Assembly (NCBI RefSeq): GCF_032444005.1
Contig: NC_091282.1
Location: 307,706,001-307,770,000 of the forward strand
Origin: Ranitomeya imitator
Taxonomy: Eukaryota
Reading direction: 5' to 3'
DNA length: 64,000 nt
The translations under genes were made by a program, and so were the position numbers. A model generated the notes under the pieces. The model did not search any database and was not told where the DNA came from. It saw only the letters and a program-made list of their open reading frames with translations. Below, piece after piece: positions 170 through 12,704 of the stretch (its first letter is position 1; each line of letters opens with the position of its first letter).

Positions 170-1335
170 TTGGTTATTAATGGAACACACTCGGACTGGG
201 TAGCGGTTAGCAGTGGGGTACCACAGGGGTCAGTATTGGGCCCTCTTCTTTTTAACATATTTATTAATGACCTTGTAGGGGGCATTCAGAGTAGAATTTC
301 AATATTTGCAGATGACACTAAACTCTGCAGGGTAATCAATACAGAGGAGGACAATTTTATATTACAGGATGATTTATGTAAACTAGAAGTTTGGGCTGAT
401 AAATGGCAAATGAGCTTTAATAGGGATAAATGTAAGGTCATGCACTTGGGTAGAAGTAATAAGATGTATAATTATGTGCTTAATTCTAAAACTCTGGGCA
501 AAACCGTCAATGAAAAAGACCTGGGTGTATGGGTGGATGACAAACTCATATTCAGTGGCCAGTGTCAGGCAGCTGCTACAAAGGCAAATAAAATAATGGG
601 ATGCAGTAAAAGAGGCATAGATGCTCATGAGGAGAACATAATTTTACCTCTATACAAGTGACTTGTTCGACCACACTTAGAATACTGTGCACAGTTCTGG
701 TCTCCGGTGTATAAGAAAGACATAGTTGAACTGGAGCGGGTGCAGAGAAGAGCGACCAAGGTTATTAGAGGACTGGGGGGTCTGCAATACCAAGATAGGT
801 TATTACACTTGGGGCTGTTTAGTTTGGAAAAACGAAGGCTAAGGGGTGATCTTATTTTAATGTATAAATATATGAGGGGACAGTACAAAGACCTTTCTGA
901 TGATCTTTTTAATCATAGACCTGAAACCGGGACAAGGGGGCATACTCTACGTTTGGAGGAAAAAAGGTTTAAGCATAATAACAGACGAGGATTCTTTACT
1001 GTAAGAGCAGTGAGACTATGGAACTCTCTGCCGTATGATGTTGTAATGAGTGATTCATTACTTACATTTAAGAGGGGACTGGATACATTTCTGGAAAAGT
1101 ATATTGTTACAGGGTATATACACTAGATTCCTTGATAGGGCGTTGATCCAGGGAACTAGTCTGATTGCCGTATGTGGAATCGGGAAGGAATTTTTTTCCC
1201 CAAAGTGGAGCTTACTCTTTGCCACATTTGCCTCTGGTTCAACATGTTAGGGCAAGTTAGGTTAGGCTATGGGTTGAACTAGATGGACTTAAAGTCTTCC
1301 TTCAACCTTAATAACTATGTAACTATGTAACTATG
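170..1335 (+). mobile_element. 5'-truncated CR1 LINE (RT C-terminal half, 3' UTR, octamer tail)
   Basis: [50 protein letters not shown] and LEKRRLRGDLI lie in one frame with a single premature TGA at 659-661; tail (TAACTATG)x3 at 1312-1335. Confidence 0.95.
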
Positions 1336-3329: not shown

Positions 3330-3513
3330 CTCCTCCTCCATTCGTTCCTACATTAAAGTCTGACGATGACACCTCAAATTTTGACGAACCGGAGAAGAAT
3401 TTACGGGCTTTACCCTCTTCGGGCCACTTGAGCGCTGCAGGTTTCTCGGGCGAAGGGCTGCCGTTTGTGGGCTTTTCATACATCAAGGCTCTTGGCGCAT
3501 TCACCAAATCTGA
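3330..3513 (+). CDS. CIT: Citron kinase exon: AGC-kinase C-terminal tail ([22 protein letters not shown]...[19 protein letters not shown])
   Basis: ctgaccag|...|gtaagt; 184 bp; hydrophobic motif FVGFSY; joins the next exon in frame (GA|G). Confidence 0.95.
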
Positions 3514-5520
3514 GTAAGTACAACGAATGTGTGACTGTCCTGACTTGGCCGGAGAATGCAGGTTCCTGTGACCTGCAGTGCTGTTTGTATGCTATCTGCA
3601 TCACACTACGCCTGCTGACATGAAGACATATACATCTCCATGGTTTCTTCTGTTTTCTCATGTACCTACTGATAAGTCCATATTAAAGGCTACCTTACCT
3701 AATGTGATTGCCTGCTGGATCCAAGTCTAGTCTGATACCTTCTAGAATGAGATGTAATAAGGCTTGAAAAGAACATCTAAAATCAACAGGCTATGGTATA
3801 AATGAATACATCCATATAGCCTGGCTGGTGACCTGCTGGGTTCTGGGTTCTGCAGAGGTTTTCTGGACCAGCATTAAAGTACTTAACGTCTATACATTTA
3901 TTTCATTAGTAAAATGGGAATGCTTTCTTCAAACTTTGGCTAGAAAGGGTGGATCCGCCGTTTCACAGTCTGACCCTGGTAAACATGTCAGGAGGAAAGA
4001 GTCAGGTCCTGGTGGATGTGCTGAAGCCGTGGTGGTAATCCTTCAATATTCAGGTTGTAACACCTTTAAGATGAAAGGACGCCAGGCTTCTCCGAAGAGT
4101 CTTTGATATTCCATAGAAGCACATTTATCTGCATAGTTCCTGCAGCAGTGGAAGTGTGACACATCTACATTGTATCGGGAGTACTTTAATAACCTGGCTG
4201 CTGTTATGCAATCGCCGTTTATGTATTCGTGAGCTCCATTCGAAATTACCCTTCTATTTTGAGAGGAGTCTTGGAGATGGATGGCACAGATTTTTTTTTC
4301 TTTTTGCCTGACCCAATATTTGAAGCTTTTGCAAATAATCCTGTATAATGGCACAATGGCCTGCTCTATCCCAATATTGGAAATTGGTTTTGCACTGTAT
4401 TTGTTGTGCATGATTTTTGGCTCTTAAAATCGTTGCTCATGTCTGGTGACCAAGTCTGAACTATTAATATACATTTTATTAGTCATTACTGTGTAAGGCT
4501 TTTCTAAATGACAATTTTAGTGCTTTAATCATTTTTATTATATTTTGTATAGGCAGCATAAAGGGTCGTTGCTGTATGGCCCAGATTTGTAGCCTTTTGG
4601 GGCTCGTTGCGGGCCTAATAGGCTCAGCAATGATGTTGGATCATTTCCATAATCTTACTTGCTTATATGGGTAATACACATCATGTTTTACTTAAAAAAT
4701 AAAATTAAATAAAAAGAAATCACCGTTTCTGTATGATCGGCCTATTGGCTGGCCAGCTAACATATAGTAGTAGTAGTAGTAGTAGCTAATTTTGATCAAG
4801 TAGTGAACAATATATTTTTATGTACTATGGTATTCCGTATAGCGCCAACTTATATTGCAGCACTATATAGACATTATCACCACTCACTGTCCCCATTGGG
4901 GCTCATAATCTAAATCCCTCTTTTTTTTTCTTCTTGTTTTTAGTTATTCTTATAGGTTAGAATTTCCAACATTGCTTTGGTGATCTTTTTTCAATAAGCC
5001 CCCGGTAGGAGTGTCGCAATCATAACAGGAAGTCCTAGAAAATCTGTGATCATTAATATAATTTATGGCTATTTGATTAATGCCAGAGATTTTGGCTTTT
5101 AGCAACCTTTATTTTTGAGTGCACTTACGTGATATTACTCTAGGTAGGAGGCAGGAATTATAAATTATTCTTGCATCATATGAAAGGCAATGTGATGTCA
5201 TGATGACCCAGATTTGTGCATCCCGAGACATGAGTAATTGATGGAGGATGACACTGGCAGTGGTTGCTTTTGTCATTTCTATGTGCGACAGATGATTACT
5301 GAAGGTGTATGAATGGTAGGGGAATGAGATGTTAGCAGGAGATGTATGACGAGGGTTATTCAAGTGAATTAAGAAAAGGCCTTCAATGACTAGACTGAAA
5401 GGCAATGTCACCTTTTAGATGGTATTCAATGACCGAATGTTGGCTTGTGAAGATAAATATCGTATGCATACGTATGTATTTAGGCTTTCGTTTTACAATG
5501 TTCTATCATCTGTTATTCAG

Positions 5521-5626
5521 GTCCATTGTTTCTGGCTTGGACTCTCCAGCCAAGGCAAGCTCCATGGAGAAGAAGTTATTTCACAAGAGCAAAGAGCTGC
5601 AGGACACACAGGACAAATGCCACAAG
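5521..5626 (+). CDS. CIT: Citron kinase exon ([35 protein letters not shown])
   Basis: ttattcag|...|gtattt; 106 bp; matches recalled mammalian [35 protein letters not shown]. Confidence 0.95.
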
Positions 5627-6306
5627 GTATTTAAATCAACACTTGGCCTCCCTGTTTGCAGCAGAAATTTACTTCCAGTGCGTTCCTGGGGATCAAGAGA
5701 GTGGTTTTATCTTTTGGGTCATAGAGCACTTGAGCGACAAGCGTCCGTCATAAAGATGTTCTCACAGATTAACAGTCCTTTTAGTCTTTCAAGTCTCGAC
5801 TGACTACACTGGATCTCCCACGTTACACCAAGTATAGGAGAGAACCGCCTTGTGTGGGAGACAAGGACAGCTGACTACGTCAACGGATCGATTAATCTGA
5901 TACTTATGTGGTGTTTTCAAAAAAGTAGACCTTCCTTCTATGCTCATGTAAATCATATTATATTAACTTTTGTATGCAACCGATGGTCTTGCCCAAAGAA
6001 AATGGCTGGAATGTGATTATTCTTTTATACTGGACACTTTCTGAAGGACCCATATTTTTTTTATTCACAATATATGTGATAATGATGAGGCAAACCATCT
6101 TCTCTCCAGATCTGGATTTGGGATAATACTGACGGGACATGAGCAGGTGAAAATGACTATCTTACCGGAAAGCTGTACGCTGTGGGCTTTTTCATTGGAC
6201 TGTGTGTAAATGTGACCAGCCAGCCTGTGGATGACTTTGTGAGCCCACCATTAGAAGAAGTGAGCTCGCTGCGACTAATTCGGGCACTAGTTGTGGCAGT
6301 AAATAG

Positions 6307-6597
<291 letters not shown>

Positions 6598-6758
6598 TGA
6601 TTCATAGCAAATACCGTAATAATGTGAAGCACTAAGTTATCCTTAGTTATATATGTGTTTCATTGTCCTCCCCAGTTATTGGTTTATATAAAAGAATTAT
6701 TTTTTCTAGATTGTTGACTACAGTTGTCTGAGATTCAGATTTTACATAAGTTTAATGC

Positions 6759-6923
6759 CATGGTCACACTATCAGTATTTGGTCAGTATTTTACATCAGT
6801 ATTTGTAAGCCAAAGTCAGGAGTGGGTGATAAATGCAGAAGTGGTGATGTGTTTCTACTATGATTTTGGCTTACAAGTACTGATATAAAATACTGACCAA
6901 ATACTGAATGTGTGAGCGTGGCC
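6759..6923. mobile_element. Palindromic MITE-like repeat
   Basis: tcagtatttggtcagtatttt...aaaatactgaccaaatactga inverted arms; related copy at about 7820-8130 is split by another MITE. Confidence 0.55.
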
Positions 6924-8760
6924 AAATAGTGAAAAGGGAAATTGCCAGATCACATATGTTTTCATCTTTTGATTTTGGAAAGCTTGGAGCAGAAGATGTT
7001 GGAAGGCGGTGATTAATTGAAAAAGGAGTTGGGCTCGTCCAGCTTGATCCATAAATGTAAGTGGATAAATGTTTGAAATAAAGTGCTAATTTTAACCAAT
7101 TTGAATCAAGCTAGACAAACCCACTTCCTTTTAAAAAAAAAAAAGTGTAATAGTGCAACTTGTTGGCTCACAAGATCATTCAGGATGATTATTAAGATGG
7201 TCATACACTCTAGTTAGCTATTCCCCAGCTGAGCATGCATGGGGAAATTGGAGTGAACTGCTACCAGTCACCTGTGGAAGCCTGTCTCGCATAAGAATGG
7301 AAGGATTGAGCATGTTGAAGATCAACATGCCCAACATCTTCTCGTTCGTCTGTCATCTGCTGTTGTGGGAGTTGAAGAATCGCCATCCGTATTAGATGGT
7401 CAGCTTGTTGTGCTGAAATCAGCATGTTGATTTTTGCTTTCATCTTCGGTGTATGGGCACTTTTACGCACTTAATAGGCACGTTGGACACTTGTACGTCA
7501 TAGTGGTATAGTTTGAACAGTTGTAAGATGGATTGAATGCTCTATTGATTAGGGGAAGTAAATTTTACCTACTAGTAATATATTGTATTATTTTTTTTAC
7601 ATTGATGATAGTTTGACCAAGTAGCACTGCCACTGTATGCCACTTATACGTTTGTGTAGGAAATACATTTTCCAGTTGGAGTATTTTTTATGTTGGTTTA
7701 AAAAGTAGGATATATATGTAACAATATCAGGTAAGTAAAATCTGTAGTGCCCTATGACTCAAAATAGAAGCCTCATTTTTAGTTGTTGTCTGAAATTACC
7801 CTTTGAAGTTACTCCAACCTTGTTCACATGGCAGTATTTCACTTCAGTATTTTGTAAGGATGCTTTCACACTGCGGTCAGGCACCCGTTGAGTGGTGGTA
7901 GTAGACTGCGCCTAAGTGTCCGCCTCCAGTAGGCATACACTCCCGAAAATGATGTGCGACAGAGCTGACGTTCGCTCTGCCGAGCCTGAGTGCAGTGCGA
8001 GAGCACCCAAAGCTAAAACCAGGAGTGGGTCAGAAATACCGAAATTGTGCAGATATTTGTGTTACACTTTTTCTCTACAGTTTGGCTTATAAATACTGAT
8101 GTAAAATGCTGACCAAACTGATGTGTGAATGTGTGCTGATTCTCATCTTATTTGCACAGTTATTTGCTCTATAGCCAATCCATTTGATAGAATTGGTCCC
8201 TCTTGTTTTCCACGGATTCCAGAGATAATAAAATGTAACAATATTATTATGAGTTAGAATAAGTTAGAATGCAATTATCAATCAGATTCATCTTTTTTTA
8301 ATATCTGTCAGTTTATTCAAAAATCTATTGTAATTGAGGCTTAGGGTCAAAAAAACATTTTTTTTATGGGGATACAGCACATTATCTACTTTTGATCAGT
8401 AGGAAATGTGCGATAACTGACTTGAACAATGCTTGTCCACAAGCGCAGACGTTATCGGCCGACTGCAGTCCACAGTCTGTAGGAGATGTTACTGCTAAAT
8501 TCCTGCACTCGATGTATAAAGATAGCCCAGGTTCTTATATTAGACAATTCTTCCAAAAAAATGATTCCTAAAATATAGTGAAACTTTTTGCTTATATTAA
8601 GCAACTACCAAGCACTACCAACATTCCAGCACTCCCAATATTCGTTTACTATAAAGTCCCATTCATAAGCTTTGATAACTCATCCTGTTTTATTGCTCTA
8701 GCTTGTGTCTCTGTTTGAAGTATCAAAAATTGAATGCATAATAGAGTGCATGGCAAGGCT

Positions 8761-9982: not shown

Positions 9983-10285
9983 GCAGGCATGTTCGATACA
10001 TGACTCAAATGGGTATATTTCTCAAAGAAAAGGGTTTTATACTCATCTGCTCGTTTACCGTAGGTTTGATGTCGCTACCCCCCCTGATGAGTCAAAAGAT
10101 GAAACGCGTAGGGAGACACCAATCGCTAAAAGGATAAGGCGGCATGGCAAACACAGACCAATGCCGGACATGAGATCCTGGATACTCAGATAAGGCACCG
10201 GTTGAATATCTGGTCGCGCAGATGAGTATAAAACCCTTTTCTTTGAGAAATATACCCAATTGAGTCATGTATCGAACATGCCTGC
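9983..10285. mobile_element. Penelope-type relic: 68-bp inverted arms enclosing a hammerhead motif
   Basis: 9983-10050 is the reverse complement of 10218-10285 with one mismatch. Confidence 0.7.
10078..10120 (+). ncRNA. Minimal type I hammerhead ribozyme motif
   Basis: ccc-CTGATGA-gtc-aaaa-gat-GAAA-C-GC-GTA-ggg: intact core, 3-bp stem II, palindromic stem III. Confidence 0.7.
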
Positions 10286-10340
10286 TCAGCCTGATCTTCT
10301 TCATAGCCTGCTATTTTCACTACATAATGCAATACTGTAT

Positions 10341-11767
10341 TGCTGTGGAGTCGTAGTGGAGATGAATCTGTGCTACACTTTCTGTAAATGCTCAGTAGTG
10401 AGACAGTGCTGTGGAGTCGTAGTGGAGATGAATCTGTGCTACACTTTCTGTAAATGCTCAGTAGTGAGGCAGTGCTGTGGAGTCGTAGTGGAGGTGAATC
10501 TGTGCTACACTTTCTGTAAATGCTCAGTAGTGAGGCAGTGCTGTGGAGTCGTAGTGGAGGTGAATCTGTGCTACACTTTCTGTAAATGCTCAGTAGTGAG
10601 GCAGTGCTGTGGAGTCGTAGTGGAGGTGAATCTGTGCTACACTTTCTGTAAATGCTCAGTAGTGAGGCAGTGCTGTGGAGTCGTAGTGGAGGTGAATCTG
10701 TGCTACACTTTCTGTAAATGCTCAGTAGTGAGGCAGTGCTGTGGAGTCGTAGTGGAGGTGAATCTGTGCTACACTTTCTGTAAATGCTCAGTAGTGAGGC
10801 AGTGCTGTGGAGTCGTAGTGGAGGTGAATCTGTGCTACACTTTCTGTAAATGCTCAGTAGTGAGGCAGTGCTGTGGAGTCGTAGTGGAGGTGAATCTGTG
10901 CTACACTTTCTGTAAATGCTCAGTAGTGAGGCAGTGCTGTGGAGTCGTAGTGGAGGTGAATCTGTGCTACACTTTCTGTAAATGCTCAGTAGTGAGGCAG
11001 TGCTGTGGAGTCGTAGTGGAGGTGAATCTGTGCTACACTTTCTGTAAATGCTCAGTAGTGAGGCAGTGCTGTGGAGTCGTAGTGGAGGTGAATCTGTGCT
11101 ACACTTTCTGTAAATGCTCAGTAGTGAGGCAGTGCTGTGGAGTCGTAGTGGAGATGAATCTGTGCTACACTTTCTGTAAATGCTCAGTAGTGAGGCAGTG
11201 CTGTGGAGTCGTAGTGGAGGTGAATCTGTGCTACACTTTCTGTAAATGCTCAGTAGTGAGGCAGTGCTGTGGAGTCGTAGTGGAGATGAATCTGTGCTAC
11301 ACTTTCTGTAAATGCTCAGTAGTGAGGCAGCGCTGTGGAGTCGTAGTGGAGATGAATCTGTGCTACACTTTCTGTAAATGCTCAGTAGTGAGGCAGCGCT
11401 GTGGAGTCGTAGTGAAGATGAATCTGTGCTACACTTTCTGTAAATGCTCAGTAGTGAGGCAGCGCTGTGGAGTCGTAGTGAAGATGAATCTGTACTACAC
11501 TTTCTGTAAATGCTCAGTAGTGAGGCAGCGCTGTGGAGTCGTAGTGAAGATGAATCTGTGCTACACTCTCTGTAAATGCTCAGTAGTGAGGCAGCGCTGT
11601 GGAGTCGTAGTGAAGATGAATCTGTGCTACACTTTCTGTAAATGCTCAGTAGTGAGGCAGTGCTGTGGAGTCGTAGTGAAGATGAATCTGTGCTACACTT
11701 TCTGTAAATGCTCAGTAGTGAGGCAGTGCTGTGGAGTCGTAGTGAAGATGAATCTGTGCTACACTTT
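10341..11767. repeat. 66-bp minisatellite, 21 full units plus a partial unit
   Basis: Unit tgctgtggagtcgtagtggaggtgaatctgtgctacactttctgtaaatgctcagtagtgaggcag; starts at 10341, 10407 ... 11727. Confidence 0.98.
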
Positions 11768-12704
11768 ATGAACATTCTCAGTAGGGGGCAAAAGAAGCCA
11801 CATTTTTTTAAACTTCTGAATGTTTTTAGCACATTCAAATAATGAGAAAAAAGCATAAGCAAATAAGGGACCCCTAATTGTACTAACCTGGACAATCATG
11901 TAGACAGGTGACTTTTACCATACTGTCAACACCGTACAAACATAACCTAAAAAATAATGGTGGAATTGCATATTTTCACCATTTCATCTCACATGGATTC
12001 AAACCCCCCCCCCTCCAATATTTTTCAGTTTTTCAGAACATTGATTAAATGGATAGTGTTATACAGGCGAGTATCTACACAGCCAACTGCATGGATCTCA
12101 GCTGCAGATCCTTCATATGTGCTATACTTCTGCTTCTCCTTTGTTTGTTGGCCCCTTGTGGCTGTCAGACCAATGCTTGAGAGTGGCTGTCATTCACTAA
12201 TTAGGACAACGGGTATATATTAAGCAATAATCCAAACAAAATTGCTTGTTGTGACTGATAAAAAAGTTAATGTTATGACCTGTCACTGTCATGATAGCAT
12301 GTCCTTCGTTAAGAGGTTGTCTGATGAAATTGCAGTGATGACGTACCTGTAGGATATATCATTAATATCAGATTTGTGGTTGTCCGGGCAACACATTGTT
12401 TAGCTGTTACAAACTCCATCGGCTGTCTGATGTAAACACTTAAAACGGAGCCGGAAAGCACTGCTTTACTCAATGTGTAGCCGCTGTTGCTTGGTTCTGC
12501 ACAACATCTGCTATCAAAAGAAAAGGAGCTGTTCTTCAGCACCCAACAGCGGCTGCTATATGTTAAATGGCCCCTTCAAACTGTTTACCATCTGTTCTCT
12601 ATCAGAGCAAATATCAACTGATCAGGATAGGTCATCAATATTATTTTACCACCCCATATAATTGTATGACTTGGGTATCTGCTCTTAGCTCTTCATGCGT
12701 GGTA

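What the first reader, a model, noticed from the sequence alone, without database searches (positions are those of the whole stretch)
5627..5803. Intron read-through after the DKCHK exon encodes a tail resembling the mammalian short-kinase isoform (CRIK-SK)
Seen: skipping the donor at 5627 keeps the frame open for 58 codons ([18 protein letters not shown]...SLD*). Knowledge: mammals make a kinase-only CIT isoform, CRIK-SK, by reading through this same junction. From memory and unverified, the mouse tail starts VSISTAGLRPCSRIL, which matches 9 of the first 15 frog residues in register. Inference: either a kinase-only isoform is conserved from frogs to mammals, or the intron start is constrained as regulatory DNA.
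Basis: partly seen in the sequence, partly recalled or inferred. Interest (0 to 1): 0.72.

Follow-up and report, generated by a model that had tools for sequence, protein, structure and literature searches.

The report
Conserved retained intron after CIT kinase exon
The open frame running into this frog citron-kinase intron is real and matches the mouse short-kinase tail, but what evolution has kept is non-coding DNA or RNA in an often unspliced intron, not a peptide.

Summary
Observation confirmed. CIT exon 5521-5626 ends in DKCHK, the donor is at 5627, and the frame stays open for 58 codons to the TGA at 5801-5803.

- **Real conservation.** Frog and seven amniote sequences share 52-55% identity, without gaps, over intron bases 7-72. 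Fish and neighbouring introns are at chance.
- **No coding signature.** pN/pS is 0.5-0.8 in the tail frame, the same as another frame, against 0.13-0.17 in the real exon. Variable sites are spread evenly over codon positions, and stops fall at 27, 28, 29, 30 and 58 codons.
- **Conservation reaches beyond the ORF.** In amniotes it covers the whole ~900-nt intron. A second block (frog 6089-6126) is better conserved than the tail.
- **Read-through RNA exists.** Contigs from three frog species are spliced upstream and run from the exon into the intron, at depths comparable to the spliced form.
- **Context.** The donor GTATTT is non-consensus and conserved. The next exon opens with the Citron-N start codon.

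Best reading: a conserved, retention-prone regulatory intron, with the tail as a by-product. Interest is moderate.

The parts
3330..3513 (+). CIT exon N-1 (184 nt, ...[22 protein letters not shown]...), context
   Evidence: It is flanked by ag| and |gtaagt. L010 shows this exon joined directly to exon N in a mammal-like RNA contig.
5521..5626 (+). CIT exon N (106 nt), ending ...DKCHK
   Evidence: Contigs of runs X15 and X6 start exactly at 5521 and carry 339 and 70 further letters that do not lie on the upstream intron, so they are spliced upstream. pN/pS is 0.13-0.17.
5627..5632 (+). Non-consensus 5' splice site GTATTT (lacks +4A and +5G), conserved in tetrapods
   Evidence: GTATTT in the frog and six amniote loci, GTATCT in the mouse-like locus. 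Fish-like loci have GTATTT, GTGAAG and GTAGGA. 'Weak' is judged against the textbook consensus GTRAGT, not computed.
5627..5803 (+). Read-through open frame: 58 codons plus TGA (5801-5803)
   Evidence: The frame is intact in related frog organism B, with 4 listed substitutions (1 synonymous, 3 replacing) and no indel. The length is not exceptional.
5627..5698 (+). Block 1 core: 72 nt conserved without gaps between frog, mammal-like and sauropsid-like sequences. Non-coding substitution pattern.
   Evidence: identity per 12 nt: 8-9, 7-9, 5-8, 5-7, 5-7, 5-7, then chance; P about 1e-5, controls at chance. One search shows no codon signature. One search shows no stable RNA fold.
5627..5764 (+). Block 1 as seen among frogs: 1 listed substitution in 138 nt between organisms A and B, against about 10% divergence further into the intron
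   Evidence: table 3 (variants at 5680, then 5765, 5776, 5789, 5810 and onwards, and a 20-nt deletion at 5832). Three of the contig's 41 differences are not listed.
6089..6126 (+). Block 2: mid-intron conserved non-coding block with the invariant 14-mer TGGATTTGGGATAA (6113-6126)
   Evidence: local score 42 against a sauropsid-like intron, null maximum 31; multiple alignment; the orthologous 50-nt window is the best conserved of the amniote intron (80-84%).
6250..6269 (+). Internal consensus donor GAA|GTGAGC at 6259/6260, spliced to the normal acceptor at 6375 in organism B
   Evidence: table 5: joint 6259->6376, GT..AG, depth 74. Sequence. The surrounding GAAGAAG motif aligns in amniotes.
6376..6519 (+). 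CIT exon N+1 (144 nt). Its first codon ATG is the residue equivalent to Met468, where kinase-less Citron-N begins.
   Evidence: P0024 (Equus asinus, 482 aa) places MEQEM at residue 468. The review PMC13577275 says Citron-N lacks residues 1-467.

Best explanation
The 749-nt intron after the DKCHK exon of frog CIT is a conserved non-coding control region that is often left unspliced.

Its donor, GTATTT, departs from the consensus and has been kept in tetrapods. The first 70-140 intron bases (block 1) and a mid-intron block (block 2) are under nucleotide-level constraint.

When the donor is not used, the transcript carries an in-frame extension ending in a stop. This is the same event that gave the mouse short-kinase cDNA (CIT-SK, GenBank AF086823). 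The frog tail resembles the mouse tail because the underlying non-coding element is conserved in register, not because the peptide is selected.

Shown here:
- orthology of the junction and of block 1;
- absence of a codon signature;
- conservation beyond the ORF;
- RNA contigs that are spliced upstream and run into the intron.

Inferred:
- Block 1 acts on the RNA as a splicing-control element beside a weak donor. A U-rich run directly after GT, followed by a C/U-rich stretch, suggests sites for single-strand RNA-binding proteins.
- Part of the intron's conservation, block 2 especially, serves the internal promoter or leader of the kinase-less Citron-N isoform, whose ATG is the first codon of the next exon.
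For: - **Orthology.** phmmer over 1.84 billion representatives returned five ORF fragments whose match runs through the exon into the tail, and no fish with a matching tail. DNA for eight tetrapod sequences shows an ungapped register for about 24 codons. Identity with frog is 34-36/66 against 11-22/66 in fish and 15-21/66 in the next intron.
- **Not coding.** Tail pN/pS is 0.79 (mammal-like), 0.66 (sauropsid-like), 0.52 (between them) and 0.82 (frog against amniotes). Frame 2 gives 0.61, 0.52, 0.55 and 1.02. The true exon gives 0.13-0.17. Variable columns by codon position are 12/16/15 in the tail and 9/3/21 in the exon.
- **Conservation exceeds the ORF.** Amniote stops fall at codons 27-30, but mammal-sauropsid similarity runs on to +282 by blastn. 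Over the whole intron it is 50-84% per 50 nt, against 30-48% in flanking introns. Block 2 scores above the null.
- **RNA.** The X15 contig lies on 5521-6665 with 339 nt of spliced upstream sequence, depth 129, and no spliced joint listed. In X2 the read-through contig has depth 126 against 75.5 for the 5626/6376 joint. In X6 the exon has depth 12.1 and the read-through contig 5.3. No run covers upstream intron 5000-5468. The mammal-like L010 contig joins exons N-1 and N and then reads into the intron.
- **Donor.** GTATTT is conserved.
- **Citron-N context.**
Against: - Contig depths are one figure per contig and cannot show RNA starts, ends or levels (tool caveat). Intron coverage could therefore come partly from Citron-N leaders, or from pre-mRNA joined to exon reads by the assembler. 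The X15 contig also runs 146 nt past the next donor, as pre-mRNA would.
- No canonical poly(A) signal lies in the frog intron, and no 3' end was seen.
- The codon test rests on 24 codons and eight sequences from three clades, so weak protein-level constraint cannot be excluded. Frame 0 does show three Ser/Arg/Leu codon switches that keep the residue between frog and mammal.
- No splicing factor or promoter element was tested. The motif readings are from memory.
- The organisms behind the Logan contigs are not named. Labels such as 'mammal-like' are inferred from the exon peptide and base composition.
Confidence: 0.6

Rival explanations
1. Internal promoter or leader only. The whole intron is conserved because it holds the promoter and 5' leader of kinase-less Citron-N. 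The RNA over the intron is Citron-N leader plus ordinary pre-mRNA. Read-through from the kinase exons is incidental and unregulated.
For: - Citron-N lacks residues 1-467, and Met468 is the first codon of exon N+1. Human CIT has two promoters.
- Conservation spans the whole intron, with its maximum in the middle.
- CpG observed/expected in mammal-like introns is 0.48-0.67, against 0.26-0.34 in the flanks.
- The X2 joint 6259->6376 looks like a short leader exon spliced to the ATG exon. Exon N+1 depth in X2 (about 340) far exceeds the 5626/6376 joint (75.5).
Against: - Block 1 abuts the donor, and its conservation decays with distance from it, as splice-site-proximal elements do.
- In X6 the read-through contig (5597-5978) has no coverage further downstream, where a leader would lie.
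- The X2 contig over 5597-6140 is as deep as the downstream pieces, so a start downstream of block 2 does not explain it.
- Contigs spliced upstream are continuous with the intron in X15 and L010.
- No transcription start site data were available.
Confidence: 0.25
2. Conserved coding tail. A kinase-only CIT-SK protein with a functional C-terminal peptide (V-F/S-x-S-x-x-G-L-x-x-C-S-R-x-L...G) has been kept from frogs to mammals.
For: - The alignment is in register over about 23 residues in all eight tetrapod sequences. C-S-R, L and G are invariant in the five-sequence alignment.
- Ser, Arg and Leu codons differ while the residue stays the same between frog and mammal-like sequences.
- The one indel seen inside the tail is 3 nt (L010).
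- Read-through RNA exists. A mouse cDNA is known (AF086823).
Against: - pN/pS is 0.5-0.8 and no better than an alternative frame, and there is no third-position bias.
- CSR becomes FSR in P0021 and CFR in P0022.
- Tail lengths are 27, 28, 29, 30 and 58 residues.
- Conservation continues beyond the stops.
- Another frame is open for longer in mammal-like loci.
- No Pfam match.
- No annotated protein with this tail was found.
Confidence: 0.1
3. Chance. The open frame and the resemblance to the mouse tail are coincidences in an ordinary intron.
For: The ORF length is common in this window (9-15% of GT positions). The splice donor itself contributes the first residues.
Against: Ungapped identity with seven amniote sequences is far above chance (P about 1e-5), while fish and neighbouring introns are at chance. 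Block 1 shows 1 listed change in 138 nt between two frogs, against about 10% beyond it.
Confidence: 0.03

Closest known systems
Mouse CIT-SK / CRIK-SK (citron short kinase, GenBank AF086823; named in PMC11527453)
   Same: The junction is the same: read-through of the donor after the exon ending DKCHK. The tail begins with an orthologous sequence (9/15 identities with the mouse-like tail in P0003). The predicted product is the kinase domain plus a short extension.
   Different: The frog tail is 58 residues, against 28 in the mouse-like sequence. Only the first ~23 residues align. No frog cDNA, poly(A) site or protein is shown. The tail shows no protein-level constraint in any clade. The mouse-like intron has a genomic A19 run at +204, so the original oligo-dT-primed cDNA could have come from internal priming on unspliced RNA. 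That last point is my inference and was not checked against AF086823.
Regulated retained (detained) introns with weak splice sites and conserved flanks
   Same: The intron is short (749-945 nt). The donor is non-consensus and conserved. Intron sequence next to the splice site is conserved. RNA is spliced upstream yet keeps this intron, while the upstream intron is not covered.
   Different: Nuclear detention, nonsense-mediated decay and regulation by any signal were not tested. The retention level comes only from contig depths.
Internal alternative promoter or first exon of Citron-N (kinase-less brain isoform)
   Same: The region lies directly upstream of the isoform's start codon. It has deeply conserved non-coding blocks and mild CpG enrichment in mammal-like sequences. 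A small internal exon end is spliced to the ATG exon in one frog.
   Different: No start site evidence. Where the Citron-N promoter lies in any species was not found in the papers available here.
Annotated 480-483-residue kinase-only CIT models in many mammals (UniRef entries, e.g. Equus asinus A0A9L0IQG9)
   Same: They are kinase-only products of the same gene that end close to this junction.
   Different: They splice this intron normally and end 15 residues into exon N+1 (...[15 protein letters not shown]), so their C-terminus is unrelated to the read-through tail.

Membership tests
CIT-SK type read-through isoform | Read-through of the 5' splice site after the exon ending DKCHK | tested here: met
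   The junction is the same in the frog (5626/5627) and in the mouse-like P0003/L003.
CIT-SK type read-through isoform | Tail homologous to the mammalian tail | tested here: met
   9/15 with the mouse-like tail. The register is ungapped for about 23 residues in eight sequences. DNA identity is 52-55% over bases 7-72, with controls at chance.
CIT-SK type read-through isoform | Transcripts that contain the exon and continue into the intron | tested here: met
   Contigs in X15, X2 and X6 bridge 5626/5627. Those of X15 and X6 are spliced upstream at 5521. Caveat: these are assembled contigs, not single molecules.
CIT-SK type read-through isoform | Short mRNA ending at a poly(A) site inside the intron | tested here: inconclusive
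   There is no AATAAA or ATTAAA in 5627-6375. The X15 contig runs through the whole intron and the next exon. Contigs cannot show ends. The A-run at the end of L003 is genomic.
CIT-SK type read-through isoform | Tail under protein-level purifying selection (needed for 'conserved isoform with a functional tail') | tested here: not met
   pN/pS is 0.5-0.8 and equals an alternative frame. Variable columns are 12/16/15.
CIT-SK type read-through isoform | A ~54 kDa kinase-only protein in cells | not testable with these tools
   No proteomic or ribosome-profiling data were available.
Regulated retained intron | Sub-optimal splice site, conserved | tested here: met
   GTATTT or GTATCT in eight tetrapod sequences. 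Strength is judged against the consensus GTRAGT from textbook knowledge, not scored.
Regulated retained intron | Retention specific to this intron relative to its neighbours | tested here: met
   Depth is zero over 5000-5468 in all four runs, while 5603-6400 is covered at exon-like depth in X15 and X2.
Regulated retained intron | Regulation (tissue, signal) and fate (nuclear detention or decay) | not testable with these tools
   Run metadata are coded, and no raw-read RNA runs were offered.
Alternative internal promoter / first exon (Citron-N) | Lies upstream of the isoform's start codon | tested here: met
   The ATG at 6376 equals Met468. Citron-N lacks residues 1-467.
Alternative internal promoter / first exon (Citron-N) | Transcription start inside the region | not testable with these tools
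   Contigs cannot show starts. No CAGE data.
Alternative internal promoter / first exon (Citron-N) | Promoter-like composition (CpG enrichment) | tested here: inconclusive
   Mammal-like intron observed/expected is 0.48-0.67, against 0.26-0.34 in the flanks. The effect is weak in sauropsid-like sequences and frog.
Structured RNA element | Stable, conserved secondary structure or an Rfam match | tested here: not met
   z-scores run from -0.7 to +2.4. The alifold consensus is -9.9 kcal/mol with a covariation term of -0.24. No Rfam hit at E<=1.

The most novel reading that the evidence does not exclude
The intron after the DKCHK exon is a three-way switch, conserved across tetrapods, that sets the output of one gene. 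A deliberately weak donor plus block 1 decide between full-length citron kinase (spliced) and a kinase-only product (read-through). The same intron launches the kinase-less Citron-N. The kinase-only form would then be a programmed, conserved isoform even though its tail sequence is unconstrained.
Probability: 0.25. Interest if true: 0.6.

Novelty: new member of a known kind. Interest (0 to 1): 0.42.

Why it matters
CIT-SK is used as a recombinant kinase reagent, but its natural existence and meaning have hardly been examined. This analysis shows three things:
- The read-through event is shared by frogs and mammals.
- It sits at a conserved weak donor inside an unusually conserved short intron.
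- The peptide itself is not what selection keeps.

That moves the question from the function of the tail to how splicing of this intron is controlled, and how it relates to the Citron-N start. It gives concrete elements to mutate: the donor, block 1 at 5627-5698/5764, and block 2 at 6089-6126. CIT dosage and kinase activity matter for microcephaly (MCPH17) and for cancer dependence, so a conserved switch that truncates the protein after the kinase domain would be relevant. It is also a worked example of a protein-like cross-species match produced by a non-coding element.

Tried and rejected
- **Pfam** scan of exon plus tail: no family.
- **Rfam** at E<=1 over 5300-6800: nothing.
- **RNA structure.** Alifold gave a weak hairpin joining the C/U-rich and GGGA stretches, with a few two-sided changes between mammal-like and sauropsid-like sequences. 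Single-sequence z-scores are not negative, are +1.8 to +2.4 in sauropsid-like sequences, and the frog breaks the outer stem. Rejected.
- **Poly(A) tail at the end of contig L003.** L005 shows that the A19 run is genomic. Rejected.
- **Poly(A) signals.** No canonical one in the frog intron and none conserved in amniotes.
- **Long P0004/P0005/P0019 'tails'.** These are artefacts of a gene caller reading TGA as Trp. The DNA has a stop after 27 codons.
- **P0007**, a model with a 38-nt mini-intron: treated as a prediction artefact on a primate-like sequence and not used.
- **Search for annotated short isoforms with this tail.** The kinase half of P0006 as query found only 480-483-residue models ending in exon N+1.
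- **Papers.** 'CRIK-SK' gave no paper and 'CIT-SK' gave two. The 1998 description (JBC 273:29706) is not held. The position of the Citron-N promoter was not found.
- **Earlier scan notes:** none on this feature.
- **ORF length as evidence:** rejected.

Full report
**What is at the site.** The window carries part of a citron kinase (CIT) gene on the + strand.
- Exon N-1 is 3330-3513.
- Exon N is 5521-5626 and ends ...QDTQDKCHK.
- Exon N+1 is 6376-6519 and begins [11 protein letters not shown].

The intron between N and N+1 is 749 nt. I could not test that the animal is a frog.

**Is the open frame unusual?** Not in itself. In this window 9-15% of GT-starting positions have 58 or more open codons, and about 31% have 27 or more.

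**Is the tail related to the mammalian one?** Yes.
- A word search with exon plus tail found one ORF fragment (P0001) that matches through the exon and 23 tail residues, 41/58 identities.
- An exhaustive phmmer search of 1.84 billion representatives gave 18 hits. In five, the match runs from the exon into the tail.
It matches the frog at 9 of 15 positions.
- Fish-type hits share the exon but have unrelated tails.
- A profile search added four tetrapod fragments with the tail, P0019-P0022.

These proteins are prokaryote-style ORF calls on short vertebrate contigs from public runs. Their organisms are not named. I call them mouse-like, mammal-like, sauropsid-like or fish-like from the exon peptide and base composition only.

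**DNA of the orthologous introns.** I fetched contigs for P0001, P0003, P0004, P0005, P0019, P0021, P0022 and three fish-like hits.
- On the DNA, amniote tails end after 27 codons (sauropsid-like), or after 28, 29 or 30 (mammal-like). The longer protein 'tails' came from a caller that read TGA as Trp.
- The alignment with the frog needs no gap for about 24 codons.
- Without the donor hexamer, frog against each amniote is 34-36 of 66 identical over intron bases 7-72 (P about 5e-5 to 5e-6).
- The three fish-like loci give 11-22 of 66. The start of the next intron gives 15-21 of 66. The acceptor flank of the upstream intron gives 19-28 of 72.

So block 1 is a real element, apparently specific to tetrapods.

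- In exon N, pN/pS is 0.13-0.17 in the true frame, and variable columns fall 9/3/21 on codon positions 1/2/3.
- In tail codons 1-24, pN/pS in the read-through frame is 0.79 (mammal-like), 0.66 (sauropsid-like), 0.52 (between the two) and 0.82 (frog against amniotes).
- Frame 2 gives 0.61, 0.52, 0.55 and 1.02. Variable columns fall 12/16/15.
- Positions that look conserved are replaced within mammals: CSR becomes FSR in P0021 and CFR in P0022.
- A few residue-keeping codon switches between frog and mammal (Ser AGC/TCC, Arg, Leu) and one 3-nt indel are the only hints of coding. They are within what chance allows in 24 codons.

The pattern is that of constrained non-coding sequence.

**Conservation does not stop at the stop codons.**
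- blastn joins a mammal-like and a sauropsid-like locus from the exon through intron +282.
- Global alignments show 50-84% identity per 50 nt over most of the intron, against 30-48% in the flanking introns. The best window lies at +551-600, at 80-84%.
- The frog shares this second block. Window 6089-6126 aligns to sauropsid-like introns with a local score of 42, against a null maximum of 31. The 14-mer TGGATTTGGGATAA is invariant in the frog, one mammal-like and three sauropsid-like sequences.
- Between two frog species, listed differences are 1 in 5627-5764, about 19 per 100 nt in 5877-5976, and few again in 6027-6140.

The tail block is thus one of several conserved blocks in a short, unusually conserved intron.

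**RNA evidence.** No run is on record as RNA, and all are kept as contigs. Starts, ends and levels therefore cannot be read.

The geometry of the contigs is still informative.
- **X15 (organism A).** One 1497-nt contig lies on 5521-6665, starting at the first base of exon N. It carries 339 further letters that do not lie on the upstream intron, so it is spliced upstream. It contains the whole intron, exon N+1 and 146 nt of the next intron. No spliced 5626/6376 joint is listed for this run.
- **X2 (organism B, about 8% diverged).** The graph branches at 5626. The read-through contig has depth 126 and the GT..AG joint 5626/6376 has depth 75.5. A further joint, 6259->6376, uses an internal GTGAGC donor.
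- **X6 (organism C).** The exon contig, again starting at 5521 and spliced upstream, has depth 12.1. The read-through contig 5597-5978 has depth 5.3.
- **All four runs.** None covers the upstream intron at 5000-5468.
- **L010 (mammal-like).** This contig joins exons N-1 and N and then reads 214 nt into the intron.

Read-through RNA therefore exists and is not rare. Whether these are full molecules, and where they end, is open. The frog intron has no AATAAA or ATTAAA.

**Mechanistic reading.**
- The donor GTATTT (GTATCT in the mouse-like locus) lacks the consensus +4A and +5G and is conserved in all eight tetrapod sequences.
- It is followed by a U-rich run and a C/U-rich stretch.
- The region has no stable fold. 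z-scores run from -0.7 to +2.4, it is less structured than shuffles in sauropsid-like sequences, and it has no Rfam match.

I infer a single-stranded binding platform that tunes use of a weak donor. That step is inference, not shown.

**A second function is likely.** The review PMC13577275 states that Citron-N lacks residues 1-467. In a 482-residue horse-family model, Met468 is the first residue of exon N+1. Human CIT has two promoters (PMC7836456). The intron therefore lies directly upstream of the Citron-N start codon. Its mid-intron block, its mild CpG enrichment in mammal-like sequences and the small leader-like exon end at 6259 fit a promoter or leader. I could not find where that promoter lies in any species.

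**Known and new.** Mouse CIT-SK is known (AF086823, named in PMC11527453). I found no report or annotation of the frog event, of the conserved donor and blocks, or of retention of this intron. The library lacks the 1998 paper, however, and the searches are limited.
- Annotated 480-483-residue kinase-only models in many mammals end differently, 15 residues into exon N+1.
- The mouse-like intron has a genomic A19 run at +204. An oligo-dT-primed cDNA could have started there on unspliced RNA. This is a caution I could not check.

- I built no joined, spliced model of the kinase-only protein.
- P0020, P0007 and P0026 have exon peptides identical to what I recall of human, and P0002 differs by one residue. 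I took them as possibly human and did not fetch, align or search their contigs.

**Verdict.** Interest is moderate, and the finding is a new member of a known kind.

Noticed in passing
window 6742-6942: High-copy repeat. Summed contig depth is 23,000-65,000 in all four frog runs, with many 'opposite strands' joints, as expected of a short inverted-repeat (MITE-like) element in the intron after exon N+1.
   Followed up: no
window 10186-11895: Long tandem array that gives open frames of 569 and 503 residues on opposite strands, made of a repeated unit of about 19 residues (...SIYRKCSTDSS.LRLHS.ASLL...). It is a repeat, not a gene.
   Followed up: no
window 170-1126: Two adjacent ORFs with reverse-transcriptase-like sequence (FADDTKL motif). 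Probably a LINE fragment in the intron upstream of exon N-1.
   Followed up: no
window 6259/6260 to 6376: An internal consensus donor (GAA|GTGAGC) is spliced to the normal acceptor in related frog organism B (depth 74). In the same run a non-canonical joint 6140->6372 with 2 extra letters (depth 105) may be a deletion allele or a second gene copy.
   Followed up: partly
L005:2036-2054 (intron +204 of the mouse-like locus): A genomic A19 run 204 nt into the intron. Contigs L003 and L004 end at it. It is a possible internal oligo-dT priming site for cDNAs of the read-through form.
   Followed up: partly
P0004, P0005, P0019 against L006, L009, L015: The ORF caller behind these Logan proteins read TGA as Trp, so the proteins run past real stops and the look-up reports 'translates_to_query: no'.
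   Followed up: yes
P0024, P0025 and cluster members: Many mammals carry UniRef models of 480-483 residues: kinase domain, exon N, and 15 residues of exon N+1 ending ...RRVSGG. This is a different kinase-only C-terminus from the read-through tail. Its origin was not examined.
   Followed up: no
P0009: A Sorex araneus protein named 'guanine nucleotide exchange factor MSS4 isoform X2' contains CIT exons N and N+1. This is a likely gene-model fusion or misannotation.
   Followed up: no
L006:2556-2578, L009, L015 (block 2): In sauropsid-like sequences block 2 begins with a perfect 8-bp inverted repeat (GGAGATGG ... CCATCTCC). The frog keeps a shorter version (GATG...CATC). Mammal-like sequences have lost the second arm.
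   Followed up: no
L017 (fish-like): One fish-like locus also has the GTATTT donor but no block 1, so the unusual donor may be older than the conserved intron element.
   Followed up: no
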